The position numbers and the translations under genes were made by a program. DNA of 63,901 nt, filler included, from Perkinsus chesapeaki ATCC PRA-425 (taxonomy: Eukaryota > Protista > Perkinsozoa): assembly GCA_013115145.1 (NCBI GenBank). It is 7 parts of 7 records of this genome, joined end to end, with 100 filler letters (N's around TTAATTAATTAA, not from the genome) between each part and the next. Parts side by side here need not be neighbours in the genome. Positions count along the whole stretch, not along the records: positions 1 to 28,213 come from JAAPAO010000480.1; 6 more parts are not named here. One strand, 5' to 3'. Below the pieces are notes generated by a model that made no database searches, was not told where the DNA came from, and saw only the letters and a program-made list of their open reading frames with translations. Positions 3,832-28,213 of this stretch are shown piece by piece; position 1 is the first letter of the stretch; every line of letters begins with the position of its first letter.

Positions 3832-4581
3832 TTATAGTTCCCCACGAGCAAGCTGCTTAGCAACAGCGAGACCAACAGTAAACATAAGCTCCTTGCCCTT
3901 CTTGCACGCATCACCATGTGGATCGTAATCACCTTCATCCCATCTCAATGGCGATCCGTCAACAGTTCCAATAGCAGCAGCACGGATAGATCTCACAGAA
4001 GCGACAGCGAAAAGAGGCGCGTTCTCCATCTCTATGGACAGCGCTCCAGCGGTAGCGTTCTTAAGCATAGTGCTATCCTCACATGGCCCGGGGTAGAAGA
4101 GGGCAGAGCTCAGCGATATGCCCAGATGACAATTGTCGATACCCAAGGACTTGGCTGTGTTGTAGAGGGCGAGAGCAATATTAATATCAGCGACAGCGGG
4201 GAAGCCACTTGGGACCAAATACTGCGTCACCCCATCTTCCCGTGCAGCACCGGTGCTGACAACCAAGTCTCCGGTCTTAATAGTGTCAGGCTTCAGAGAA
4301 CCGCAAGTTCCAAGCCTTATAATGACTTTAGCACCACACTTGATGAGCTCTTCGAAGCATAACATGGCACCAGGTCCCCCGATTCCGTGGGAACAGATGC
4401 TCAGTTTGGTGCCCTCGAACTCAACGTTATAAGAGCGGTACTCACGATTGAACGAGAGCTCCTTGAAATTGTCACAGAACTTCGTAGCCACAATCTCGGC
4501 ACGAAAGGGATCTCCAACGACAAGAACTACGGGGTTGATGTCACCTTCGAAGATCTTAAGATGTGGAGCCTCGTACGGCAT
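3832..4581 (-). CDS. PNP: Purine nucleoside phosphorylase (NP-I/hexameric family, Plasmodium PNP-like), intronless
   Basis: Motifs HLKI, VVLVVGDP.R, NREY.S, SHGIG, FEEL...GAKVIIR.GTCGSL, A.REDG, EMEN and VDG.P..WDEGDYD are collinear with the recalled PfPNP sequence. Start at ATG 4581 (MPYEAPH). Confidence 0.95.
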   Translation of the reverse strand: MPYEAPHLKIFEGDINPVVLVVGDPFRAEIVATKFCDNFKELSFNREYRSYNVEFEGTKLSICSHGIGGPGAMLCFEELIKCGAKVIIRLGTCGSLKPDTIKTGDLVVSTGAAREDGVTQYLVPSGFPAVADINIALALYNTAKSLGIDNCHLGISLSSALFYPGPCEDSTMLKNATAGALSIEMENAPLFAVASVRSIRAAAIGTVDGSPLRWDEGDYDPHGDACKKGKELMFTVGLAVAKQLARGEL

Positions 4582-4830
4582 ATAAGGATAAGAGTAGTGC
4601 AAGAAATATATACCTGTTAAAGAAGCCGCCGGAGCACGCACCGGACTAAATCCAAGGTGACGACGGAGTAAATCGAACCAGTGAATTACCCATTATTGAG
4701 AACATAGTGACAACGCAACAGTTTCATCGGGAATGAAGAACTTGAAACGAGGAACTTGAACCCGTGGATGAGCGTTTCAAGATTCGCATACAAAAGCGCG
4801 CGCCCCTCCGTATGGACAGTGTGATGATGC

Positions 4831-5382
4831 CTACTGGGCGAAGGCCTGAGACCCGGCGATAATCGAGAGCACCGAGGACACTAAGAGATAGCTTACATAG
4901 TAGGCGGCAACAGCTATAAGGGCAGCAATAAGAAGGGGAAGTACACCTACGCCAGCTACGGTGCTTGAAGCTTGAACCTCGGCCAGGCTAGGGATGTCGT
5001 TGGCCTAGAGAGTGACAATGGAAATGAGGGAAGGAGAGGAGGAACTTACTCTCTCACATCCCTTGAGAATGCCGATTTTGTGCTCGGCTGCGATATGCCT
5101 AGCTGCGTCAGAGTGACCGATTCCTTCATAGTCTTCGGTCACATCTTCCCCGGCAACTGCCAGAATAACCTAGCAACAACCTTGTCTGTATCATGCACGC
5201 TTCGAGCAAAGATTCCTCACATCGGGACCGCCTGGATGCTCATTAAGAAACTTGGACACATCATAGACGCCACCGTGAATAACAACCCAGCAGTCGCCCT
5301 TCTTGTTGTGCTTCGCAACTTCCTCCGGATCTATGACGGGGAGCTTCTTAGTTGACGAGGTTTCCTCGGATGGCTGGGACAT
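4831..5382 (-). CDS. Tail-anchored cytochrome b5 (4 exons)
   Basis: Spliced reading: [35 protein letters not shown]|[34 protein letters not shown]|..[17 protein letters not shown]|AFAQ*. Both haem ligands (HPGG, GHS) and a C-terminal TM segment are present; all three introns are GT-AG. Confidence 0.93.
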
Positions 5383-5792: not shown

Positions 5793-8700
5793 TCATGGAA
5801 TCTGTTTACCCATTCGTATCCTATCCGAGAGATTAGGCGTCGGGACTCTGCTGCCACTCAACGCTGATCGAGCTGACATAGGTGGGGTCGGAGGCCGGCT
5901 TCGAGGGGAGTTGGCGCGAGAGGATCGAGCCGATGCCGGCTGCCCGGGCAGGGGCGGGGGAGCCACAAATGAGCCCCGAGGAATCCCTTGACGCACTCCG
6001 TGAGCCGACCCAATGACCGAGGGCGGTGTCCTCGATCCTGTCGGTGATACTGACCGGGGGAGCCCTCTAGCGGACCCGACCATTGAGGAGCTGCGCGACA
6101 GAGGAGGGGTTGTTATAGGAGGTAAGGGAGGCACGCCGCGACCAGTCGACGCCCGAGAGGTCGGGGAAGAGCCACCCCACGATGGAGTCCCGTCCTTGAT
6201 CACCGGTGGCAGTGGGCCAACTGGTAACTGGGCACCATCTTCCACTCGCATGCCACTGGGTCGTCGGCGATCTAGGGATGGTGGGAACGGGGAAGTCTTC
6301 GGCTGAGACCTCTTGGGTTTCGTGCGCAAGAATGCTGGGAGATGCTCCTCCTCATCCCGGCCCATCGGTCGGACCTTTCGTTGGTTGAAATCGCCCTTCT
6401 TATTTCGGCGACGGATCTCGAATTTGCGGACTTCAACAATCATATTCACAAGAGAGCGTACCACGTCCAACACGAACACAGAAGCCGCCATCGCCACCAT
6501 CACGGCCTTGTACCACAGAGACTCAGTGTCCGCATTGAACTTAAGAGAGTACGTCAAAACCAGGAAGAAGCTGGCCATGCACCAAGCTATGCAGGCTAAA
6601 TATGGCAGGGCCAACACTGCTGTGAAGACCCACTCGGGTATAGGCTTAAAAAGATCTTGTTGCTCCCTCATCAGCTGCTTCTGGTGCTCCTGCTGTACTC
6701 TGTCCAAGTACACCAGTTTAACTCGGCGAATGAAAGAACTGGCGTCCTCCGTTGGTGGAGCGGGTGGCGCTGGAGGGGCAGCCATTGCGGAACGAATGGG
6801 TGGCGGTGGAGGCCCGAACCCAATGCCAGGAGGGTATCCAACCGGCACCATCGCGAGCGGGCCGACCGGCATGACTGGTGGTAGTGGCGGAGTGGGTGGC
6901 CTAGGGATCGCTAATGCCAAATCATCCATACTCCGTGGTGGTGGAGGAGGAGGCGGTGGTGGTGCCATGCCGTGCTTGGCCTCGGGTTCCAGCACAGGAG
7001 GCGTGCTGCTTCCTGACCGGGGCTGCGGCGGCGGTGGCGGCGTAACCGCTTTCCCTTGCTTGGGCGGTGGCAGCGGTGGGGTAGCCCCGTCCCTCCGCGG
7101 CGGTGGAGGAGGAGGTGGTGGAGTTCTACCACCACTAGTGGGAACACCAAAACTCATAGCTCCCTCCGACTTGGGCGTGCTAGGGGATGGCCCAGCAGCC
7201 GGGGGTGTGGCAGCTTGCTGTGGCGGCCGCATCGGTGGCGGCGGTGGTGGGGGCGTCATCGCTCTTGGTGTTGATGCTCCACTAGTAATCCCACCAGGCA
7301 ACGCAGGAGGGGGCACAGGATTTACCCCAGAGACAGCGGGAGACACAGGCCTCTTGGGCGGCGTCATCATCGGCGGGGGAGGCGCCGGGACACTGCGCGC
7401 AGAGCCCGAATCACTATCAGACGCGGGAGCATCCCGAGTCCACCTCGGTGGTGGGGCTGGTGGTGGCAGCGCCTTGCTGATATTAGGCGGCAATGCCGGA
7501 GCCTTAGCCCCTCCTCCTCCAGTGCCACCAAAATAAATGGGAGGTAACAGAGCCTGTGGTGGTGGTTTTGGAGCCTCAGCCATCCTCGGTGGTGGCACCG
7601 CTCTCTGCTCATCCTCGATTGCAAGACCGGCTACTGGCAGACCCTGTGGTGCATGACTCGGTATCGGTGGGAGCGCCGGCAGCCCGCCGACCAACGGCTT
7701 ATAGGGGGACGTTATGGAGCCTAGCGCGGGCAGACCACCTTGGATAACCGACTTGGGTATCTTAGACGAAGAGGCCTCCTGCATTCTCATTGCATCGCGA
7801 ATCCTATCCCGCTCATCGTTCGGGGCCTTCCTCTTGATAATGCGCCGACTATACGGCGTTGGTCGCATAGAGAACATGAGATAGACCACACAGTAGGCAG
7901 GGTACACGACAAGCGCCGATAGAATGCCGGTTGCCACAAACTGACTCGAAGACGCAAATGTATTTGGGGTGCCGTAGATCAGCGCCGACACACCCATAAT
8001 GCCAGCCATCATAGTGAGGGCACACAGTAACCTCTGAGGGCGAGTGAAGCTCTCGGAGTAGTACAATGGTGCCAGTACCACACTTTCGTGGCGAAGAACG
8101 TTCCAAAAAGTGAACAGAAGGAACTTCTCCCGCATGCCTTTCTGACTGGATATATATTGGTAGGCTATGGGGTCGACTATGGTCAATGGGGAAGTGATGC
8201 CATCACCGTCCAAATGGTACGGTGACAGGGCAGCCCTCCCGCGCCTTTGGTCATCACGCATACTTTCGTCAAATTTATATCCCCAGAATGACAGAACGAT
8301 AATCAACACCGACGTGAAGCCAAGCACACTGAGCACGAAGAATCTATTCGCTGGCGGCGCTCTCAGCAGGAAAGGAAGGTCTGCCGCGACTGCCATAGTG
8401 GCGAACTCCGGTATCTTGCCGTCGATGAAAAGACCGATGTCACCGGCCCTCGTCACCAGGCATCCCTGGGCATCATTCAAGTTGCCTTGCTCAGTCCAAG
8501 CCCCACCAGCTGTGCCCGGTGCGAACCTATCCCAGTACATACAGAGAGCGTTCGAATAAAGATCTCTGTCGGCGAAGACTCGAATAGGTTCGTCATCGAC
8601 GCTAGTCGTAAGAGTCAGGTCCGGATTGGCCTTCATCACCAACAAGGTGACCATTGCCTGCTCACTGCTCACTGGTCCGCTGATGGACCAGCTACGTGGA

Positions 8701-11700
8701 TCCATCTTGTACTCTACATACTCGAAGGAGAACCCGGTGATAGGATTGTCAGGGGTGGGGTTATCCGGTGAATTAGACGGGACAACGTACTTGCTTGGCA
8801 TAGAGAATGACGGGTGCACCGCGGAGAGGTCCGTGCTCTTACCGATATAAATGACAAAGGAAGCGACATCATACACTTTGGGGTCTTCATTCGCAACCAG
8901 CTGATTAACCAATCGCTTTACGATAGCATCTCTGATGACTTCAACTCTAGTAAGAACTTGACTGGTATTCCTTCTCTCCTGGAAGGCCGTCTTCTCCACG
9001 ATCTCGGCCTGTTCTTGCTTCTTCTGTCGCATTGTGGTCTGTAGCTGCGGACTCAATGTGCTGACGTACATCTCCCATTCAATGTCCTCCGCGCGCTTTA
9101 TCTGTTCAACCCTCTGGGCCTCCAAATAAAGTGCTCTGGTCGCCTCAAACGCGGCAGACTCTCCCTCGGCAACAGAGAGCAATCCTTGCTGGTATGTCTG
9201 GGACAGGTTCTGCTGCAGCGAGACCTTAATCTCGATCAGCTGCCTTCTCCGCACCTCACCGCTGCCGTACCCATCAGTCAGACGTCTGTGCTCCCGATCA
9301 GATTGGCTCTCCCTAAAAGCACTCTGTCTCCCGTCAGAGTTCTGCCATTCCTGTCTAGCATCGAACTCGGTCAAATTGGTATCTTCGATGATTGTGTCGT
9401 CATCTGTCTCCCGTACAAAGCGCTCCACCCAATCGCCCCACCATCGACCCCGCCGGGACGATATCCTCCTGCGAGTGCCCCCTGGGACCTTCATAGCAGT
9501 TTTGGCCTCATCTGCCATTGCGGAGTGTACCACATACGTGGCGACGCTGCATTTGCGTCCATAGAACCAGCACGGTGGTTGGAAACAACCCGTGGTGGGA
9601 TTATACTCCTGGCAGCAGACCAAGGCATGGTGACGATCCCCCCAATCTCCGAACCCTTTCATGCACTTGACCCCCACCTTATCACAAAAGGGCTCTGGAC
9701 ACTCCGTCACAACACTCTGACCAAATTCAATCTCCTCATGATGGGCCCCGCTGAGCCGTCTGACTGTGCCGTGCTCATAGCCAATGGGATCTACGACGTG
9801 CTTCAAGGGAAGACCTTGCTCGTAGGAGCCTTCGGGATATATCGCCCGAATAACTGGCTTCAGTGCTACAGTGTCGTGGGGCGTCAGCATCAACCGACGG
9901 CGACCACCGCTATTGGCGCCACCACGACGCATGAAGCGCGGCCCAGCAAGAATGGCGCTGATCGCCTGGAAGAGAGTGTACGTCTGCTGGTCCGTGATCA
10001 ATGCCGACGACTCCTCGATCCTCTGTATGTTGTCTTCCATAGTCGATAGCGTCACATCCTGCATTTTATCGTTCATAGACACACCCGATGCGGCCATGCT
10101 GTTGAGGAACACCAACTGTCGCTCGCCGCACTCGGGCGAGATGCACTTCGTCCCTGATACGGAGTCAAGTATCTTGTCCGTAACAGCGTTCTTCTCCTCT
10201 TCGCTCGCCTTAGACAGGATACCCAGCGCCGCCATGTACAAGGTGATCGTATTCTCGGGGTTGGAGGCGGCCTGCCCACTGGCTTCCTCCAAGATGGCAG
10301 CTGCAGCCTTAACCGGGTCCTCCGGTGGGGTAGCAACAATCTCCTGAAATTTGTATACGTATTCTCCAGCCGAGTTCTCAATGTACACAAACACTATTCG
10401 CCGATAATCGTATTCCTCCCGGCCGCACTGCACCAGACCCGTCTGTGTCCGAACCGGTTGCGGCGCATCAGTCAACCAGTACTTTACCGCGTCTTGCACC
10501 AAGAAGTCGTCGCTCACTGTGTCTAACGTGTGGCTGTCATCCACTATATAACCAAACCTGAACTTCAGTGGTGTGTCTTCAGATATCCACTCCTCGGCCG
10601 TGAAAACCCTGTCGAGCTCACAACCAGTCTCGGTAGTGTCACCGCCATCTTCACCCCGCACCTTCACAATGAACTTGCCCTTTGTCGGTGGTCCACTTGC
10701 AGTGGCAATTCTGATATCCGAAAAAGATTCTAAATTCATTTGTGTGCCCTCTACCACCGCCGACCACATAACGGTCAATCTCAACGTGTACTGTGTCTTC
10801 AGCTTCAGGCAATCCGGACCAACTGTAATCGTCGGACTTGTCGATGTCCACCGCGCAGTGCCGTCATTCGTACAAAGTGCGAGTAGGTCAACCTTGACAT
10901 AGGTGAACTCCGGTACCGGGTAAGTGAGACCCTGCTCCTTGTACTGCTCCGCTTGGTCAGGATCATAATCCAGATTCCTCTGCCGCTCCAACAGTGACCA
11001 CGAATATGTCACATCTGGGTACTTCTCCGCATTCAGATTGTGCGTTCCCTGCACCTTCAACGCCTTGCCTATCGGGAACTTTTCATAATACGGGCTTACG
11101 AGCTCCAAATTGATCTTGGGCAGCTCATAGTTCGTCAGCTCTATGTCGATTTCCTTTGCTGTAGACCTCTTATTGTCGAAATGTGTCACTTCCATCCCAA
11201 AGGTGTAGTTCCCAACATCCATCAGCGCCGTGTTAATCGCTACCGTTCCCCGCCCTACTCTGCAAAACATCTGCCGGTCATCAAACGCAATCTGCGGATA
11301 GAGCACACCGCCATCACCAACAAACCTGTCCACCGTATAGTCCTGTACACAAGTCTTAATGCCACCACTGAACTCAGGTGTCTCCCCGAAGCACGGCAAC
11401 AACGTCGCGCCGCTGCGGCACTTCCATTTGAAATTTCCCTTGAACACTCCAGAATGTATGTCGTCCGGGTCCTCAGTACTGCCACAATTGATGTAAAGAG
11501 TCTTGCCCTTTTGGACTTTACTAAAGTCAGGGTTGTAACATTTCGGCACCAGCTCGGACTTGAGCAAATAGACGCTCATGGACTGATGGGACTTCTTGCT
11601 GGGGCTGTCGACTAGGAACACCTCCACGGTAACGCTACAGACCTCGCACGCCGCAGCGTTGAAGTCATTTTCAAACCAAACAATGTCGCCCGGACACTGA

Positions 11701-14700
11701 TGGGTGCCCGCGGGAACCCTTAGACGATTCTGATTCTGGATGGTGTCGACGTTGGCAAGATTCACCGAGCAGTTCGCAAAGGACCATTTGTAGCCCAACA
11801 CGTTCTCCGCCGACACGCACTGTGATGCCTTCCCCACGGCATTCAAGAAGTACTCCTTGTTGCGGTACACACCAATCTGATAGAAAAACCGTAAAAACTG
11901 ACGACACCAGATATGGCGGATACCTTTAGCTCGCCGACAATAGTAACAGTCGGCGCCGAATCTGCCAACTTCTGAACAGTAAACTGTTCTGTCGTAGTCA
12001 ATGCCCACGCACTTGTAACTTCAATTTCGAATATGTGATACGATGCCTGACAAAAAGTCATGTTAGTAGTGTTCCATGTTGGTCTACAGCCCACACAAGG
12101 CTTCTTCCGACCATGAAATTACAAAGGGACAGGAAGCTTGTTGCTAGTAGCAACAACACCTCGAAAGATTTCCCACTACAGTTTTGAGGTTGCCTTGTAG
12201 GCCTCCTTTTAGCAAGTAAAAATATAGCCAATCAAGCTTCCTGAAACGTCTCCATATCACATTTCCTGAGGAAATTCCTTTACATTTTCCTTTTTTCCGA
12301 ACGTCAAAGGGAAAAAATTGATCGTCCGATAAACACAAAAGTGTACAGATTTGCAGACTGTACAAGAATACGTCGCCTTTTGAGATTCTTCCACAAAATT
12401 TCCCGTCGTAAACCCATACCGCTCCCGCCTCACAACTCCCCAAAGCCCACCTTAGCCAACATGTCCGCATACAGCGTGACGGAGAATGCATTATTAAGGT
12501 TAGCTTCTGCAAGGACTTCATTGATCAGTTCTACCTTATCAGCATGGGAGGAGTTGCCACCGACTAAAGTGAGACATAACGCATCGCCCCGCTTCTTTAC
12601 GTACCTCCACCGTCGTTCGCTCCCCCAGTAGCCACCGATGAAAGCGCTGTCACGGATTCTAGCTTCCACACGTAAGTGCACTTCCGCCTAAAACCGCGCG
12701 CCACAAAATCAAACAGAGCTCCTCAGCCTAGGTACTTACCCGCAAAACTGCGTGTCACCGAAATCTAAAGTGACATCGGCACAGACGTCCACAACTAGTG
12801 AAGGATCAGCCCGTAGGTTCGGCTTTGGAGGCACCAGATCCGACGGCACTTGCACCTTGACAAGAACGTAAATATTAGGGCGGCTAACCTCCCACTGAAA
12901 GACTCTCAGGTATTAGTGTCGCCCGTTATGGGCAGAAGACTTGTGAGAAATACAACAATTCTGCACTTTATCTATACATACTCATGGCACTTCCACCTTG
13001 GCGAGTGTGGGAAAGTTAAAGTCAAGCACGGTCAGCCCATTCAGGGTAAGCGAGAGCTTTGGAAATTAAATGGAGCAGCCCACTAATTAGAGCAATCAAA
13101 AATCGCTTCGCTCCGCCCTACCTTGCAGCATCCAGTGCTATAAGCACTCCATTGATCATTCTGTGTTCGACATACAAAGTTGGGGCGAATACAAAGAGTA
13201 TGTCCAAAAGTAAGAGTGCTACTTTTATCCAGAATAATCTAAACACAACGATAGTCATACCGATTCCTCCGCTATCCCCTCACCTCGATCTGATCCTTCT
13301 GTATAAAGGCACATGTAGCTCCCTCCAAATACTGGAAGGAGGCATCAGCAAAGCACGTCTTAGCCGATACATGGGAAGTCACCTAAACGGTTTATGAAGG
13401 CATAAACAGTATGGCAATGCAAGACGATCCCGGAATATCTAAGGGAATATCCAAGGGAATTCCACCGCCCGACTTCTCTATCTTGAAGGCTGTACCTTCT
13501 ACGGCGAATCGGCCAAGTAATTTTCGGGCGCAGTCGAGAAAGGCTAGACATCACTTTGACCCAGGGTCTATTAGAATCGTCCAAAGTGATCTTCTACCCC
13601 TCAGAGACCTCACCTCGTAACTGTAGTCGATGGTGTCCGGTATGCCATCGTAATCTATATCCTTGCATTTGCCCCCCATCAAAGTAACACTATCAAACTG
13701 TATGACAGCCGACAGACCCGTCATGGACATCTCGCAATTAGACATCTCAGCTCGAGGTAAAGTCATAGGGAAGCCTGGATCCGGCTGGTATCTATGCGCA
13801 CTCGCAAGATTTTTCGCTTCCCACAACCCCTCCTACAGTTCCATAGTAACCGCCTTCGACTCAATTCCGTCCTCCGTTGACCGTGCCGTACCCTTCGCTC
13901 CTCCCCACAGTGACAGCGCCTAACCCCCGTATAATAATTAATGTTTCGACCACTCCCTATTACCTCGGTTCTGATGTCGAAACACAAGACCGATGGTATG
14001 GCATTTAGCTTGGCCTCTGATCCAGTAGGCTGATTTTGGAGCACCTACGAGAGAGAGGAACCATTACAGAATTCCTGCCGCACCCCCGCTTCCGAACAAC
14101 TCATTTTGCCCAAGTAATTCCAGAAACTTAATTGCCCAGTCGATTACACAAGTCCACAAAAGACACAAAACCAAAAGACATATTAATCGCCAGAATGCCA
14201 GGACATATTGCCGCCTAAACCGCCACGCACATTTGTCACTCAACGGTAACCCTCAAGGATCAGCTACCACTCAAAAGGCAAAATCGATCATTCGACTCAC
14301 AAACATCACCCGCCCCGATATTATCGATCTCGCATATCAGGTATCCGCAAGTCGGCCCCTTCTACTACCTTTCTATCATCCGTATAAGTTGCCCCGCCCA
14401 CGGTATCATACAACATAATACCATGGCATGATCTGTTGTACATATGGTTACTAGCTGACACTCCCGCCAGTAGATTCAAATTAGCTGTCTCGGACACTGG
14501 TATCATATACTGCACATTTGACCCTAACAACAACAGCACCCGTGCAAGCACACAAAAACTGTCCCGCTCCACCTGAGCTAGTCCAGAAGGGCTCCGCAAT
14601 AAGTGCTTGAGTCTGTGATTGCCTATAGACCCTTGCCAAGGACAGGAACTCTATGTTGCCGTTTCTATTAACCATAGCTCCAACGTCTCCATAATACCTT

Positions 14701-22496: not shown

Positions 22497-22911
22497 ACCA
22501 CATTTCCGCTATATCTTAGGTACCATAGAACGTAGGGCTTTTGGGCTTCTGATCCTCAACGATTGGAGTGAGGAGTCGGACACGTGGACCGTCTCCTGGT
22601 AGCGCCAAACCGCCGCTGGCTCCTGCTGCTGTTGTGGAGCTCATTCGTTTTGGGAAAGCTATACGTTGGAATTAGCCTTGACGAAAATTGAGCGATGCCC
22701 CCTAATAGGAATTTCATTAGGCTGGCGATAACAACTAAGAGTGGTCCCCGACCACTAGTGTTGTTTCCAAAGAGACTGCGCATGGAGAGGTGTTGAGATT
22801 TGTGGCGCGCGCACTTTTCAGCACACAACTAAGGGACAGAGCTAGGCTAGCGGATCCATCCCAGGCAGGTTCCCAAGACGCCTGCTTGACGCCAGTTTTA
22901 GCAACTTCACA

Positions 22912-24003
22912 ATGGCAGAAAACCAACAACAACAGCAGCAGCAACAACAACAACAACAACAGCAAGAGGAACTACCGGTCGAGGTTCACTTCGAGGCGGC
23001 AGTCTTGTCCATATTTGTAACGTTGGACACTCCTAACTCAGTCAAGAAAGTTTTTAAGGACAACGGCCTCACCACTGTCTCACTGCTGTCTGCTGCTCCC
23101 ATTGCGGATATTACTCAGTTGTTTCAGGCTAAGTCTATACTCGAGAGATCTGCTGGATTTGCTGTAAAGGCCCGGGCTACCACAATCCTCCCCCAAGTTC
23201 AGGCTAATGTGGAAGCTGATAACGTAGACCCCCAACATATCGCTTTGGTCGAGAAGGTTACTGCAAAGTACAAGCTTGTCAACAAGATTGCTCCTTCCCC
23301 GGACCTTTTGCCTTCAACGAGATTGCTCCGAAGACTATATGAATCACCACTTTCGATGATTGATCTGGCGGACTGCGTGGACGAGTACGGAAGCAACATG
23401 GCGGCCTCGATCAAGTACGAGGTTTCTATGAGAGGGGAGCTCGTGGCCGTCCAAGGCAGCCCACCAAAGTCTCGTAAGATCGAAAACGTAGCACAGTGGG
23501 TCAAAGCTTTTGGCATATACATGGTAGGACTTCTTTTAGTTTCAGCAGATGATACGAGAAGAGACAAGTTCTGGATTGACGCCTCATCCTTGATGTCCTA
23601 TATGACGAGGACAGTCGGAAGAATGGCGGTCGATTTTGAGAGAGGTTGTGTGGCTGATAAAACTTATCGATCTCGTTTGCTAGCCTGGCGCCTTGAACGT
23701 CAATTGGATCCCTGTGAGCTCTTCAGACGTGACCAAGATCCTTCAATTCGGATTATGATCCCACCATCAACTCCTCCTATGGTGACGACCTTCCCTTCAA
23801 AACCTGCTGGTGTGTCTCCTAATCGATCTAAGAAGCGAAAGGTTTGCTTTGCCTATCGTAACTCCGGAACGTGCAAGTTTGGTAGCACGTGTCGCTTTGC
23901 ACATGTTGAAGGGACATCAGCGGCAGGGCTATCTGGTGAAGATCAGTCGAAGAATAGCGGGCAAGTGGGGCAGTCATCTACCAAGATCAACAAGAAGAGC
24001 TGA
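22912..24003 (+). CDS. Gag-like ORF1 of YR element 1 (polyQ, SAM-like domain, C-terminal CCCH finger)
   Basis: CFAYRNSGTCKFGSTCRFAH is a C-x8-C-x5-C-x3-H finger; 14 Gln codons at 22924-22965; lies directly upstream of RT. Confidence 0.85.
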   Translation: MAENQQQQQQQQQQQQQQEELPVEVHFEAAVLSIFVTLDTPNSVKKVFKDNGLTTVSLLSAAPIADITQLFQAKSILERSAGFAVKARATTILPQVQANVEADNVDPQHIALVEKVTAKYKLVNKIAPSPDLLPSTRLLRRLYESPLSMIDLADCVDEYGSNMAASIKYEVSMRGELVAVQGSPPKSRKIENVAQWVKAFGIYMVGLLLVSADDTRRDKFWIDASSLMSYMTRTVGRMAVDFERGCVADKTYRSRLLAWRLERQLDPCELFRRDQDPSIRIMIPPSTPPMVTTFPSKPAGVSPNRSKKRKVCFAYRNSGTCKFGSTCRFAHVEGTSAAGLSGEDQSKNSGQVGQSSTKINKKS

Positions 24004-24286
24004 ATCTTCAACTATAAGCAGCGAAGTCGCATTGTGTCACTCAATTTTATATCCATCTTGTTTGCTCTAAGCTGTTACTTGTGTTTTCGGACAGGCCACA
24101 TTCCTTGAGACCTTGAGAAGTACACACTATGTACTACATAGTAAAGGGCTTCTGGGAGGTGGAATAGCCTGAGGTGGGAATCATGGTGATTTCCTGTGAG
24201 CCAATTCGTAAGCTTGATTTGGCCTGGGTAGTAAGTATTATGCCAGTAATATTTTTGCTGTTGCAGTTGATTCCTGTGTTTTCAAA

Positions 24287-26476
24287 ATGTTTCCTACTCT
24301 AAGTTCGGATTTTTATGCTACGCATGTTGCCAAAGTAATGCACATGTCACAGCATATGTTCGATTCCGAACGGATTAAGGCAAATGAGGCGTTCCAGGAT
24401 GGTTCAGCATTTGGTTCAGTTCTTCCTACTTGGGATGAACCAGCTCCGCTGATGTTTGGAGAAAATTTCCCCCTTTTGGACTCTGTGGTGCAATACACTA
24501 TCAGTCAAAACTTACCGGCTCTATTTGCCGAAGTTGATGGGGTACCTTCTCCAAGTCTCCAACAACAGTTACATTCTGCGACGTTGGAAACTGTGAAGTT
24601 GATTCTTCGAGACTGGGAAGAGTCTTATAAGGTTGACACTTCAACATCTACGTGTGGTGGTTCTCTACGCCCGGGTGTTCTCCTTAGATTGTTGACCGAA
24701 ATCGGGGATCCAGACTCTCTCGAGTTATCCCAAATAATTCAGCACGGGGTCAATATTGGTCTTCACTCTAGCGTGAGGGATACTGGTCTATTCCCAAGGC
24801 TGAAAAAGGATGATAGACGAGATGCTATGTATCCTAAACTATTATGGTCTGACAATAACTATAAGTCTGCAGATGACCCACTCCTGGAACCCTTTATTAA
24901 TTCTACATTGGTCAAGGAATGTGAGGCGGGGTTTATTCGTGAAGTCCGGCAGTCCGATTTACAACATTGCTGTAAATTGGGTGCCATTGGTAAATATTCC
25001 GATGGTGTATTGAATGGAGTTAGACTGATCGAGGATCACCGCAGAAGCGGTCTTAATTCTCGCCTACAATCGGTCGAGTCCTGTGCTCTACCGAAGGGTG
25101 CAGATTTGATTACTTTATTGAAGGCAATAGAGTTGGCTGGGGGCCCTCTATCAATCTGCCAGCTAGATGTGGCCCATGCATTCAGGCATATCCGTTTACA
25201 ACCGAGTGATTGCCCATGGGTGGGATTTTCATATCACCACCGCTTCTTTATGAATATGGTACTCCCGTTTGGCCTATTAACAAGTCCGTTTTATTGGGCA
25301 AGATTTGCTTCTTCAGTGCATCGTCTAGCCATACGGTTGATTGCACGGTCTAAAAATTCCTATCCGGTTCCTACAACTAATGTCCTGGGAGGTGGTCTCC
25401 TGTATGTGGATGATCACACTTTTATATCTTCTTGCCCGCGGAGAATGCCACTAATAACAAGTCTACTTTGTGTGTTGTGGTCTCTACTGGGCTGTGATCT
25501 ATCATGGCCAAAACTTAGTATAATATCTACTCCTGGTTACGGTACGGTAAATGAGACACGTATTCTTGGTTATGGCATACGATTGATGAACTCGCCGGAT
25601 AACAAGTTTTCAGTATTTATACCAAAATTGAAGCTAGACTTGATCCAGTCTCAGCTGAATACGGTCCTCAACGACACCAGAATTAGTGCTAAGGATTTGC
25701 AGAGTCTACTTGGCAGATTACAGTGGGTGGGGGAAATGTTCATTTTCCTTAAGCCTCACCTTCGAAGCTTCTGTGCTAGCGCTGCTATAGTGCAGCGAAA
25801 AGGTTAACGCTATTTACCTATCGGCAAGAAGGCCCAAATCCGAAACGATGCGGCGAAACTCCTCTCCCTTGTTACTGAGAGATCGCCAGAAATATCGTTA
25901 TGTACTAGATTAGCTTGGTGCAGGCCAGAGGTAGAACCTGTCACCGTTGTGTCTGATGCTAGTACAGTTGCCTTAGGAGGTTATGTGGTCTTGTCTATTA
26001 GCTCTCCAACAATCTTTTATTTTCGGTATAACATTGCTAATATTCCGCCATTAGTAGCCAGTACGATTCTGCAGGCCAATCCTGTTGTTTCGTCGAAGGA
26101 TATCATAGCGTTGGAATGTTTGGCAGCAGCTCTGGCATTGCTGATTGCCAAAGAGAAATGCTTATGTTATGCTGCATGTACGCGAGCGTGGAGGCCTCTA
26201 ATCCTACATTCTGATAATAGCGGTGTCGTTGGTATGTTCAAGAAGTCTTATGCTCGTAAATCAACCTGTAGTCCAATCCTTCAACTGGTATCTAAAGAAG
26301 TGTGGCAGCTGTCTATACCTACGGGTTTCTACCACATTCAAGGCGTTGACAATACCTTAGCGGATTGGTTAAGTCGGTCAGCAGAAGGAGATGTGCTGTT
26401 AACGGAAAGGTTTGAACGAGTTTCTGTCGAGCATTGGTTACAAGAACTATCGATGGTATGTGAGCAGACTCGGTAG
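24287..26476 (+). CDS. RT-RNase H (pol) of YR element 1, interrupted by one in-frame TAA at 25805-25807
   Basis: RT motifs LDVAHAFRHI, VLPFGLLTSP, YVDD, ILG. The same frame continues past the TAA into RNase H: SDAS, IIALECLAA, HSDN, HIQGVDNTLADWLSR. Confidence 0.93.
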
Positions 26477-26581
26477 ACCTTGCATACCACAAATTTATTC
26501 TGTACAGAGTCTTACTTTTATGCTTGTAGTGTTGTGTTTGAGTTCAACCATAATTTATCTGCAGTTGATTGCCTGCAATTG

Positions 26582-27965
26582 ATGCTTCCTTCGATCGAGA
26601 GGTTATGTAAAAGTTTAGCTTTAAGTATACCAGATACGGTTGGTACGATATTAGATCAGGAAGGACTCCTTACCGTCTCTCTCTTGGCCTCGGTTCGCGA
26701 GAATGATGTGAATTACTTGGCGCAAAAAGTTCCAATAGTAGACCGTACTTTCTTAGTCTCAATTTTCGTCAAAGCGAGAACTTTAGCACAACTGGAGTGC
26801 GCTCAACCATCGAGTGTCTTACCAGAAACACTGCCGAGTGCTGATTGTCCGTCCACTCATCGAAGGTCTGGTGGTTCTAATATATCTGACAGATCTGGTG
26901 AGGCTCTCCAGCGTCGTATTGCCGATATATCAACAGCCCTCGTACCAACAGCATCTATCATGAAGTGTGCGGTGGATGAATTTATCCTGGAAGGATTAGA
27001 ATGGTCAACTAGAAGGCAATATGGTAGAGTGGAAACTATGTACCTGCAGATGGTCTTACCTGGCGAATGCGGTTTTCCATTACAACCTGATTTGTTAGCT
27101 CGTTTTGTGTATGTTCTGAGCAAGTGTGGCTATGCTCCTTCGACTATGGAAAGCTATACCAGATCACTGCGAGCAGTTAATTCTCGGCGCGGGCATGTTT
27201 TGTCGCAATCGGGAGTCTTTCTTGCAAATGCTGCGCTCCGTGCGGCGAAAAAGATGTATAAAGGCCCTTCGGGACGCAAAGCTCCTGCATTCACATCTGC
27301 TCAATTACATTCCCTGGCCGAGTATTCTGGCTCGCTACAACATGTGAAAGCGGCGGCATTGGTCGCTATCTTTGGCTTGCTGAGATCTGAAGAGATTCTT
27401 GGCTTATCCTTGGACGATATCGCCTTTTTCAATCTTGTTGGGCCATCAGCTGTGCCCCGTGTTACGGTGACATTGAAGCGGAGCAAGACGGATGGTGGTG
27501 GTAGCTCTAATTCGTGTACGGTTGGCAAGGGAACCGTCCTGACGATTGCTTGTGTTGAGAACAGCCAGTATTGCCAGCACAAACTATGTCCTGTCCACTC
27601 ACTCCTGTGGTACGTGTCATCTTTCAGGCCAAATAACGCTGTTGATGAGACCCTAGCTTCAGTAATACTGAAGTACTGAATCAGTATCGGCGTTCGTTGA
27701 CGTTACCGGCGCGCCGCTAAATTATTCATGTTTCCTTGAGGGGTTACGCTATATCGTTCGGTCGTCTGAGGTGTCTACCCATTCGTGCCGACGTACCGGA
27801 ACGCAACTACTATTCCGAGCAGGGTACTCTGTATTACATCTATGTCAGTATGGTCGCTGGCGGTCGGGGCCAAGTGGTGCGGTGTTGAACTATTTGGATG
27901 ATGTTACTCTGTGCGAGGTTGGTAATTATGCCGGGAGGATGATGGCGGTGGTAGATGCGGAGTAA
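26582..27965 (+). CDS. Tyrosine recombinase of YR element 1, frameshifted at ~27670-27680
   Basis: GLLRSEE (R), KRSKTD (K) and CPV in the first frame. The +1 frame is open from 27672: PLNYSCF..THSCRRTG (HxxR), GRW and NYL (catalytic Y). First ATG at 26582. Confidence 0.92.
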
Positions 27966-28213
27966 GCGACGGGCTAATGTCCTAGGCTCTGTGACAGAGC
28001 CTTTTGCAGTTCACCCTTGATTTGTGAGGAGTAACGTGGCCCAAGCTAGTCGAAAGAGTTTTTCAGACGGGTGATGTGTTGAGTTGAACAAAAAAGGAAA
28101 GGCAGCGTGCTCCTTGGTGAGCGAGGTGGAGCGTAGAACGGGAGGAGGCCTGCGGCACGTTCAGCCGTGCGATCGGACCCTGTTGTTCACAGGTCAGTCT
28201 CTTCGCACTGCAT

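What the first reader, a model, noticed from the sequence alone, without database searches (positions are those of the whole stretch)
23023..26779. The same SAM-like domain heads both Gag and the tyrosine recombinase of one retroelement
Seen: Gag aa38-88 (23023-23175; LDTPNSVKKVFKDNGLTTVSLLSAAPIADITQLFQAKSILERSAGFAVKAR) aligns with the YR N-terminus (26621-26779; LSIPDTVGTILDQEGLLTVSLLASVRENDVNYLAQKVPIVDRTFLVSIFVKAR) at roughly one-third identity by hand, including GLxTVSLL, D, L.Q, I..R and VKAR. Known: the pattern G[LI]..V.LL......D[LI]..L......R resembles sterile-alpha-motif helices, which polymerise head to tail, and DIRS-order recombinases normally begin with a DNA core-binding domain. 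Inference: the separately translated YR could co-assemble with Gag through homotypic SAM contacts and so be loaded into the particle. I know of no description of such a mechanism.
Basis: partly seen in the sequence, partly recalled or inferred. Interest (0 to 1): 0.85.

Follow-up and report, generated by a model that had tools for sequence, protein, structure and literature searches.

The report
Gag domain copied onto retroelement recombinase
In one lineage of tyrosine-recombinase retrotransposons of the clam parasite Perkinsus chesapeaki, the recombinase carries an old, still well-formed copy of the small five-helix domain that heads the element's own Gag protein, which suggests (but does not show) a way to bring a separately made enzyme to the Gag complex.

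Summary
Window 22912-28213 is a decayed Ngaro-like retroelement (Gag, RT/RNase H, tyrosine recombinase YR) of Perkinsus chesapeaki. Gag aa 36-92 and YR aa 46-102 align at 19/53 identities. The local score is 71, against 35 +/- 5 for shuffles. A profile of the two YR copies matches Gag N-domains of other families (hhalign P 7e-6). Searched over the whole 41.7 Mb genome, its best foreign hit is the element's own Gag (E 0.016).

AlphaFold models made from separate alignments give the same five helices (pLDDT 93.6 and 82.5) and hit the same solved structures: NusA acidic repeats, SAM domains, Rad51 N-domain (Z 6-7.7). The fold class is therefore SAM-like/(HhH)2. A true polymerising SAM is not shown, and no Pfam SAM or HhH model matches.

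The domain heads Gag in many Perkinsus families. It sits on the YR only in this lineage (window and contig C182), ahead of a 60-70 residue linker; 19 other YRs start at the core-binding domain. Third codon positions are randomised, so the duplication is old and kept at protein level.

Co-assembly with Gag is plausible but untested. I rate this a new variant of a known kind, of moderate interest.

The parts
22717..22913 (+). 5' split direct repeat A1 (untranslated leader, ends at the Gag ATG)
   Evidence: 95-98% identical copies on contigs C3115, C3381, C2838, C3379 and C3177. In the first three the copy is followed after about 18 nt by the sequence of window 28141-28213, giving joined A-B units of about 420 bp.
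22912..24003 (+). Gag-like ORF (363 aa): poly-Q, N-domain, middle region, CCCH zinc finger
   Evidence: ORF list. 38% identical to the Gag of sister element C182. Weaker matches to Gags of other Perkinsus YR-element families.
22996..23220 (+). Gag-N domain: five-helix SAM-like/(HhH)2-like bundle (Gag aa 29-103)
   Evidence: AlphaFold2 model m664e6aafaf86, pLDDT 93.6, helices 5-13, 18-26, 32-37, 40-46 and 52-79 of window:22984-23223. Structural matches.
23830..23910 (+). CCCH zinc finger of Gag (aa 307-333)
   Evidence: Pfam PF00642, E 2.4e-6, above the gathering score.
24287..25807 (+). Reverse transcriptase part of the RT/RNase H gene, ending in an in-frame premature stop at 25805-25807
   Evidence: Pfam RVT_1, E 9e-7. 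The sister element has one uninterrupted 729-aa RT/RH ORF across this point.
25808..26476 (+). RNase H part of the RT/RH gene (same frame, after the premature stop)
   Evidence: Aligns with the C-terminal third of the sister RT/RH ORF at 37% identity.
26582..27679 (+). Tyrosine recombinase ORF from its first ATG (stop-to-stop frame opens at 26477), truncated by a frame break near 27679
   Evidence: ORF list. 35% identical to the intact 442/448-aa YR of C182, which matches Pfam Phage_integrase at E 1.2e-7.
26591..26803 (+). YR-N domain: copy of the Gag-N five-helix domain
   Evidence: AlphaFold2 model m28f640a04252, built from the two YR sequences only: pLDDT 82.5, helices 5-13, 19-27, 33-37, 41-48 and 53-75 of window:26579-26818. 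Same PDB match set as Gag-N. hhalign and genome-wide profile hits.
26786..26974 (+). Linker between YR-N and the core-binding domain, rich in Ser, Pro and Thr (about 63 aa)
   Evidence: Composition, and only 11% identity to the sister's linker, against 26% in the N domain and 44% in the core.
26975..27676 (+). YR core-binding domain and first part of the catalytic domain
   Evidence: Aligns with 20 other YR ORFs of the genome.
27771..27965 (+). C-terminal catalytic motifs of the YR (HxxR, GRW, Tyr region) in a different frame
   Evidence: Translation. Aligns with the C-termini of the C182 and C219 YRs.
28141..28213 (+). Start of split direct repeat B1, cut by the contig end
   Evidence: 99-100% identical to the sequence that follows A in the joined A-B units of C2838, C3381 and C3115.

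Best explanation
Shown: window 22717-28213 is a decayed copy of a Ngaro-like tyrosine-recombinase retrotransposon of Perkinsus chesapeaki. Its Gag begins with a five-helix domain of about 75 residues, of the SAM-like/(HhH)2 fold class, which also heads the Gags of many Perkinsus YR-element families. In one lineage (this element and the element on contig C182) an old duplication placed a copy of that domain at the very N-terminus of the separately encoded recombinase. It sits ahead of a poorly conserved 60-70 residue linker and the normal core-binding and catalytic domains. Both copies have stayed foldable although synonymous sites are saturated. Inferred: the copy works as an 'address tag', a protein-protein module that takes the recombinase wherever Gag-N goes. 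That could be direct contact with Gag-N in Gag assemblies, or binding of the same partner that Gag-N binds. Either way, an enzyme not made as a Gag fusion would end up with the Gag/RNA/cDNA complex. The duplication and the fold class are well supported (about 0.9). The address-tag role is a hypothesis (about 0.5), and direct Gag-YR contact is its narrower version (about 0.3).
For: Similarity beyond chance at pairwise, profile and genome-wide level. Independent AlphaFold2 models with the same five-helix layout and largely the same structural neighbours. The domain is present in both proteins of a sister element only 35-38% identical, whose three ORFs are all open. Distance from the first Met to the core-binding domain is conserved at 125 against 123 residues. 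Orthologous conservation is N domain 26%, linker 11%, core 44%; between the two paralogous copies no DNA similarity remains and third codon positions are 10/44 identical. So the likeness is kept at protein level. Nineteen other YR ORFs of the genome have only 19-80 residues before the core-binding domain, and none matches the Gag-N profile. The Gag-RT-RH-YR gene model P0004 of another family carries the domain only in its Gag part. Gag-N is found in P. chesapeaki, P. olseni and P. marinus Gags. In this genome the combined profile's 15 hits (E <= 0.01) lie mostly on contigs already seen to carry Gag or YR homologues; I did not inspect the weakest ones individually. Most Gag-N copies are acidic (pI 4.1-5.4 in 7 of 9) and lack the Gly-x-Gly hairpins of DNA-binding HhH motifs, which favours a protein-binding role, as in NusA acidic repeats or SAM domains (reading of A3).
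Against: Only two elements carry the YR copy, and the window copy is dead (premature stop in RT/RH, frame break in YR). C219 is nearer to the window by YR identity (49-56%) but decayed; it shows no recognisable YR-N and has a shorter spacer. Pairwise Gag/YR similarity inside C182 is not significant on its own. Structural Z values (6-7.7) are in the range the tool calls common for small helical domains, and the best Foldseek E is 0.36. No expression data could be found. All other YR-element families manage without the tag. There is no evidence of binding of any kind.
Confidence: 0.5

Rival explanations
1. The domain is a nucleic-acid-binding (HhH)2-type module. Gag uses it, with its CCCH finger, to hold the element's RNA or cDNA. 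The recombinase acquired it as an extra DNA-binding arm, comparable in logic to the arm-binding N-domain of lambda integrase, without any Gag-YR contact.
For: The best structural neighbours include (HhH)2 modules of NusA, Rad51, Pol theta, Pol iota and MutY. Atlas neighbours carry HHH_5 or DUF4332. The profile weakly hits an HHH_5 repeat protein (E 8.7e-4, summed over repeats). The window Gag-N and the C182 YR-N are basic (pI 9.4 and 8.9).
Against: No Pfam HhH model matches, even at E 10. The hairpins lack the Gly-hydrophobic-Gly signature (alignment A3). Most Gag-N copies are acidic. The HHH_5 hit rests on adding up weak repeat scores; the best single stretch is 12 bits. A long flexible linker suits a recruitment module better than a recombinase arm, though lambda integrase also has a linker.
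Confidence: 0.2
2. The YR copy is a functionless relic of a template switch or recombination that duplicated the 5' end of gag in front of the YR gene. It is carried along because it does no harm.
For: Only one lineage has it. The closer but decayed relative C219 shows none. Other families do without it. The C182 pair is barely recognisable pairwise.
Against: It has survived divergence of the two elements to 35-38% protein identity while the adjoining linker fell to 11% identity. Synonymous sites between the paralogues are randomised, yet the protein still folds with confidence from two sequences. The start codon and the spacing to the core domain are conserved.
Confidence: 0.15
3. The likeness is chance or convergence between two unrelated small helical segments.
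For: The segments are short and identity is about one third at best. One of 3000 shuffles reached the pairwise score. Small helical bundles often give middling structural scores (notes).
Against: Profile-profile P is 7e-6 against families that exclude both elements' own Gags, with shuffled controls far below. The best genome-wide foreign hit of the YR-only profile is precisely the Gag-N of the same element. Helix boundaries in the two independently built models are nearly identical.
Confidence: 0.05

Closest known systems
Ngaro-type tyrosine-recombinase retrotransposons (DIRS order)
   Same: ORF order Gag, RT/RNase H, YR. No methyltransferase domain was detected. Split direct repeats of the A1-[ORFs]-B1A2B2 kind as described in PMC8547959: A1 lies upstream of gag, B1 downstream of YR, and joined A-B units occur elsewhere in the genome.
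   Different: The YR carries an extra N-terminal domain copied from Gag. Gag has a CCCH rather than a CCHC finger. The A2B2 end is not visible because the contig stops.
Gag-Pol fusion (frameshift or readthrough) of retroviruses and LTR retrotransposons
   Same: It addresses the same problem: getting the enzymes into the Gag assembly. Functionally, a Gag-derived domain fused to an enzyme would be a minimal version of a Gag-Pol fusion (established knowledge of retroviral assembly; inference for this element).
   Different: Here only about 75 residues of Gag are present. They are encoded a second time in the genome rather than produced by translational recoding, and they sit on the recombinase alone. 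No assembly role has been shown.
SAM (sterile alpha motif) domains, e.g. tankyrase, EphA2, LEAFY N-domain
   Same: Five-helix bundle of similar size. VIA-align Z 5-6.2 over 62-71 residues for both models.
   Different: No sequence match to any Pfam SAM family. They do not rank above (HhH)2 modules. Polymer interfaces are not identifiable.
NusA C-terminal acidic repeats AR1/AR2 ((HhH)2 modules used for protein binding)
   Same: Among the top structural matches for both models (1u9l_B Z 6.4 and 7.2; 2jzb_B Z 6.2 and 5.8). Acidic character in most Gag-N copies. Degenerate hairpins.
   Different: No detectable sequence relationship, and an entirely different biological context.
Lambda-integrase-type core-binding domain (Phage_int_SAM)
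   Same: It is also classed as a SAM-like helical domain at the N-terminal side of tyrosine recombinases (from my knowledge of SCOP and Pfam naming).
   Different: The element's YR already has its own core-binding domain further down the protein. YR-N shows no similarity to it (hhalign score 7.6, background level).

Membership tests
Ngaro-like YR retrotransposon (DIRS order) | Encodes a tyrosine recombinase instead of a DDE integrase | tested here: met
   The sister YR matches Pfam PF00589 at E 1.2e-7. The window YR is 35% identical to it and has the HxxR / GRW / Tyr region in a shifted frame. There are 52 YR matches in the genome.
Ngaro-like YR retrotransposon (DIRS order) | Reverse transcriptase and RNase H | tested here: met
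   RVT_1 at E 9e-7, 29.2 bits against a cutoff of 29.6, so just under Pfam's gathering score. The RNase H part is assigned by alignment to the sister RT/RH ORF, not by a Pfam hit.
Ngaro-like YR retrotransposon (DIRS order) | ORF order Gag - RT/RH - YR, without a methyltransferase domain | tested here: met
   ORF maps of the window and of C182. Pfam gives no methyltransferase.
Ngaro-like YR retrotransposon (DIRS order) | Split direct repeats A1-[ORFs]-B1A2B2 | tested here: inconclusive
   A1 (22717-22913) and the start of B1 (28141-28213) are present, and joined A-B units of about 420 bp occur on three other contigs. A2B2 of this copy lies beyond the contig end.
SAM domain (Pfam SAM_1/SAM_2, SCOP a.60.1) | Compact five-helix bundle of about 65-70 residues | tested here: met
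   Predicted models of both copies. SAM domains are matched at Z 5-6.2.
SAM domain (Pfam SAM_1/SAM_2, SCOP a.60.1) | Sequence match to a SAM family profile | tested here: not met
   No SAM family found at E up to 10 for any of the four domain copies. Language-model neighbours that are SAM score only 0.77-0.82, below the tool's lead threshold.
SAM domain (Pfam SAM_1/SAM_2, SCOP a.60.1) | Head-to-tail polymer or defined SAM-SAM interface | not testable with these tools
   The single complex prediction gave no verdict. No interface can be read from the sequence.
(HhH)2 domain (Pfam HHH_5 and relatives) | Two helix-hairpin-helix motifs with Gly-hydrophobic-Gly hairpins; profile match | tested here: not met
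   The topology is compatible. However, no Pfam HhH hit was found. The first hairpin has a single Gly and the second has none (alignment A3). The only sequence link is a summed-repeat hit to P0024.
Lambda-integrase-type core-binding domain | Homology to the core-binding domain of the same recombinases | tested here: not met
   hhalign of YR-N against the core-binding alignment of 21 YRs gives score 7.6, P 0.71.

The most novel reading that the evidence does not exclude
The YR N-domain is a Gag mimic. It docks into Gag-N/Gag-N contacts of the assembling particle, so that a recombinase translated from its own ORF is packaged without any Gag-Pol fusion. This would be a genomically encoded 'mini Gag fusion', a packaging route not described for any retroelement.
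Probability: 0.3. Interest if true: 0.75.

Novelty: new variant of a known kind. Interest (0 to 1): 0.55.

Why it matters
The Gag-like ORFs of tyrosine-recombinase retroelements are defined almost only by position and have no known domains (PMC6681497, PMC8547959). How their separately encoded recombinase meets the cDNA and Gag is unknown.

This work defines a foldable, genus-wide Gag N-terminal domain. It also shows that one lineage has grafted a copy of it onto the recombinase. That gives a concrete, cheap test: do two 75-residue domains bind each other, or a common partner?

If they bind each other, it would reveal an alternative to Gag-Pol fusion for loading an enzyme into a retroelement particle. 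If they bind a common host or nucleic-acid partner, it would point to a shared targeting step.

It also corrects an annotation. The deposited gene model KAF4658769.1 is a spliced-around, broken RT-RH-YR of this transposon, not a host gene.

Tried and rejected
1. Complex prediction of Gag-N with YR-N. The score was 0.26 against a mark of 0.34 and the controls were not run. There is no verdict; this is not evidence either way.

2. Word-indexed protein searches with the YR-N region and with the whole Gag found nothing.

3. A metagenome scan with the YR alignment found no relative.

4. A profile search of PDB sequences found nothing meaningful.

5. Foldseek against viral structures gave no significant match and no retroviral matrix-like hit.

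6. The language-model atlas gave only sub-threshold leads.

8. I looked for a remnant of YR-N in the decayed relative C219 by tblastn, three profiles and a DNA alignment. Nothing rose above background. A resemblance seen by eye in one frame is not supported statistically, and I do not claim it.

9. The idea that YR-N duplicates the recombinase's own core-binding domain was rejected.

10. Recent gene conversion or an assembly artefact as the source of the likeness was rejected: there is no DNA similarity and third codon positions are random.

11. The profile hits to the repeat proteins P0017, P0020 and P0024 come from summing weak repeat scores.

Full report
**What is at the locus**

The window is contig C2927 of a 41.7 Mb, 3544-contig assembly. 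The organism is Perkinsus chesapeaki. The recombinase of a sister element is 100% identical to the NCBI protein FOL47_000804 of that species, and the window's own gene model is KAF4658769.1.

From 22912 to the contig end lies a retroelement with these parts:
- A Gag-like ORF (22912-24003, 363 aa) with a CCCH zinc finger (Pfam PF00642, E 2.4e-6).
- A reverse transcriptase (24287-25807; RVT_1 E 9e-7, just under the gathering score).
- An RNase H part (25808-26476).
- A tyrosine recombinase, YR (frame open from 26477, first ATG at 26582, to 27679).

The copy is decayed:
- An in-frame stop at 25805-25807 interrupts what is one 729-aa RT/RH ORF in the sister element.
- The YR frame breaks near 27679, so the C-terminal catalytic motifs lie in another frame at 27771-27965.
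- The deposited gene model (P0008, 931 aa) splices around these lesions.

**Classification**

The ORF order is Gag, RT/RH, YR, and no methyltransferase was detected. Window 22717-22913, ending at the Gag ATG, recurs at 87-98% identity on five other contigs. On three of them it is followed after about 18 nt by the sequence of window 28141-28213, forming joined units of about 420 bp.

That is what the split direct repeats of Ngaro elements (A1-[ORFs]-B1A2B2, as described in PMC8547959) would leave behind. The A2B2 end of this copy lies beyond the contig end, so this feature is only partly seen. No second full-length copy of this element is in the assembly.

**Is the similarity real?**

The evidence, from weakest to strongest:
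- Full-length Gag against YR gives a local score of 71 at this place. Shuffles give 35 +/- 5; 0 of 1000 single shuffles and 1 of 3000 double shuffles reached it. Gumbel P is about 6e-5, and BLASTP E is 0.016.
- A sister element on contig C182 is 35-38% identical in protein and all three of its ORFs are open. It has the domain at the head of both Gag and YR.
- A profile of the two YR copies matches a profile of Gag N-domains from seven other families, with both elements' own Gags left out. The hhalign score is 33.4 (P 7e-6); 200 column-shuffled controls gave 8.9 +/- 1.8, maximum 15.9.
- An HMM built only from distant Gag N-domains picks out the window YR (E 2e-4) and the C182 YR (E 1.7e-3) at the right residues. 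It picks none of about 20 other YR ORFs.
- Over the whole genome in six frames, the YR-only profile finds its two members and then the window's own Gag-N (E 0.016).

The weak point is that the Gag/YR pair within C182 is not significant by pairwise alignment alone.

**Fold**

Gag-N, modelled with an 11-row alignment, gives pLDDT 93.6 and helices at 5-13, 18-26, 32-37, 40-46 and 52-79. YR-N, modelled with only the two YR sequences and no Gag rows, gives pLDDT 82.5 and helices at 5-13, 19-27, 33-37, 41-48 and 53-75.

The two models find largely the same solved chains: NusA acidic repeats AR1/AR2, a trypanosome mitoribosomal protein, SAM domains (tankyrase, Sans, LEAFY N-domain, CNK/HYP), Pol theta, and the Rad51 N-domain. 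Z values are 6-7.7 for Gag-N and 5-7.2 for YR-N over 60-73 residues. Foldseek lists EphB2 SAM and NusA first, but at E 0.36 or worse. Atlas neighbours carry HHH_5, DUF4332 or NusA domains.

By the tool's own note these scores are middling. What carries weight is that nearly every match belongs to one fold class, the SAM-like fold of SCOP (a.60), which contains both SAM domains and (HhH)2 modules.

I cannot decide between those two:
- No Pfam SAM or HhH model matches any of the four copies, even at E 10.
- The hairpins lack the Gly-x-Gly signature.
- The only sequence link to HhH proteins comes from adding up weak repeat scores.
- YR-N is not a copy of the recombinase's own core-binding domain.

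**Distribution and history**

A profile search of 1.84 billion representative proteins returns 23 hits. Apart from three repeat-protein artefacts, those whose source I looked up are from P. chesapeaki, P. olseni or P. marinus, and the others read as Gag-like sequences. The domain lies at the head of a Gag or of a Gag-RT gene model in each. The only YR contexts are the window and C182.

In the genome itself the combined profile finds 15 sites at E <= 0.01, most of them on contigs that also gave Gag or YR hits; I did not examine the weakest sites one by one. Nineteen other YR ORFs have only 19-80 residues before the core-binding domain. The window and C182 have 125 and 123 residues from the first Met. 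So Gag-N is ancestral in Gag, and the YR copy is a gain of one lineage.

The YR profile is nearest to the Gag-N of its own lineage: score 34 against 10-20 for single other families. This fits a duplication within the element.

The duplication is old. The two coding segments share no DNA similarity and only 10 of 44 third codon positions. Between the window and C182 YRs, the N domain keeps 26% identity, the linker 11% and the core 44%. Retention of a confidently foldable domain next to a freely drifting linker argues for constraint.

Against this stands C219. It is a decayed element closer to the window (49-56% in the YR). It has a shorter spacer and no recognisable domain.

**How it may work**

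The following is shown:
- The YR has a Gag-derived, independently folding N-terminal module on a flexible tether.
- In C182 the YR ORF lies in a different frame from RT/RH and begins with an ATG at the start of the domain.

The following is inferred. The module gives the recombinase the same address as Gag-N. Most Gag-N copies are acidic (pI 4.1-5.4 in 7 of 9). Together with the degenerate hairpins, this favours a protein-binding role over nucleic-acid binding. The window Gag-N and the C182 YR-N are basic, however, so the DNA/RNA-binding rival stays open.

The complex prediction gave no verdict, and no RNA data were found. PMC8547959 raises the possibility that Ngaro Gag influences integration-site choice. 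A shared targeting partner would fit that as well as co-assembly would.

**Novelty**

The element is a member of a known kind. The Gag-N domain has no Pfam family, and the literature held here describes YR-element Gags as lacking recognisable domains (PMC6681497). Four literature searches found no report of a domain shared between the Gag and the recombinase of a YR element.

I rate it a new variant of a known kind. The sample is small: two elements in one species, one of them dead.

Noticed in passing
L065 (C3115:37723-38004), L066 (C3381:23566-23837), L067 (C2838:83015-83285): Joined A-B repeat units of about 420 bp, 87-100% identical to the two ends of the window element. They look like solo remnants left by recombination between split direct repeats, and imply that this family was active recently although only one long copy is assembled.
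   Followed up: partly
window 24287-27965: The deposited gene model KAF4658769.1 (P0008, 931 aa, 'hypothetical protein, partial') is the RT-RH-YR of this transposon. Its predicted introns skip the premature stop and the frame break, so it is an annotation artefact rather than a host gene.
   Followed up: partly
window 5793-12008 (-) and 3832-4641 (-): Host-like genes upstream of the element: a 2071-aa ORF with a REJ domain (E 8.5e-22) and a purine/uridine phosphorylase-family ORF (PNP_UDP_1, E 2.7e-31).
   Followed up: no
whole genome G000: At least 52 YR matches and 15 Gag-N sites in many mutually distant families (24-38% identity). P. chesapeaki thus holds a large and diverse population of YR retroelements, many with open frames.
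   Followed up: partly
L063 (C219) 4608-4982 (+): A fragment of an unrelated reverse transcriptase (RVT_1, E 2.3e-5) sits where the Gag of the decayed C219 element would be expected, suggesting a nested insertion.
   Followed up: no
window 22919-22972: The Gag starts with a run of about 18 glutamines encoded by CAA/CAG repeats. The same simple repeat matches dozens of places in the genome. The sister Gag has no such run.
   Followed up: no
L076 (C1165:16365-16481): The YR-N profile gives a weak match (E 0.065) in a 56-aa open frame on another contig. This may be chance or a fragment of a further copy.
   Followed up: no
window 26474-26479: In the window, RT, RNase H and YR all lie in the same reading frame, and RNase H and YR are separated by a single stop codon. 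In C182 the YR is in a different frame, 95 nt downstream of the RT/RH stop. How the YR is translated is therefore unclear and may differ between the two elements.
   Followed up: no
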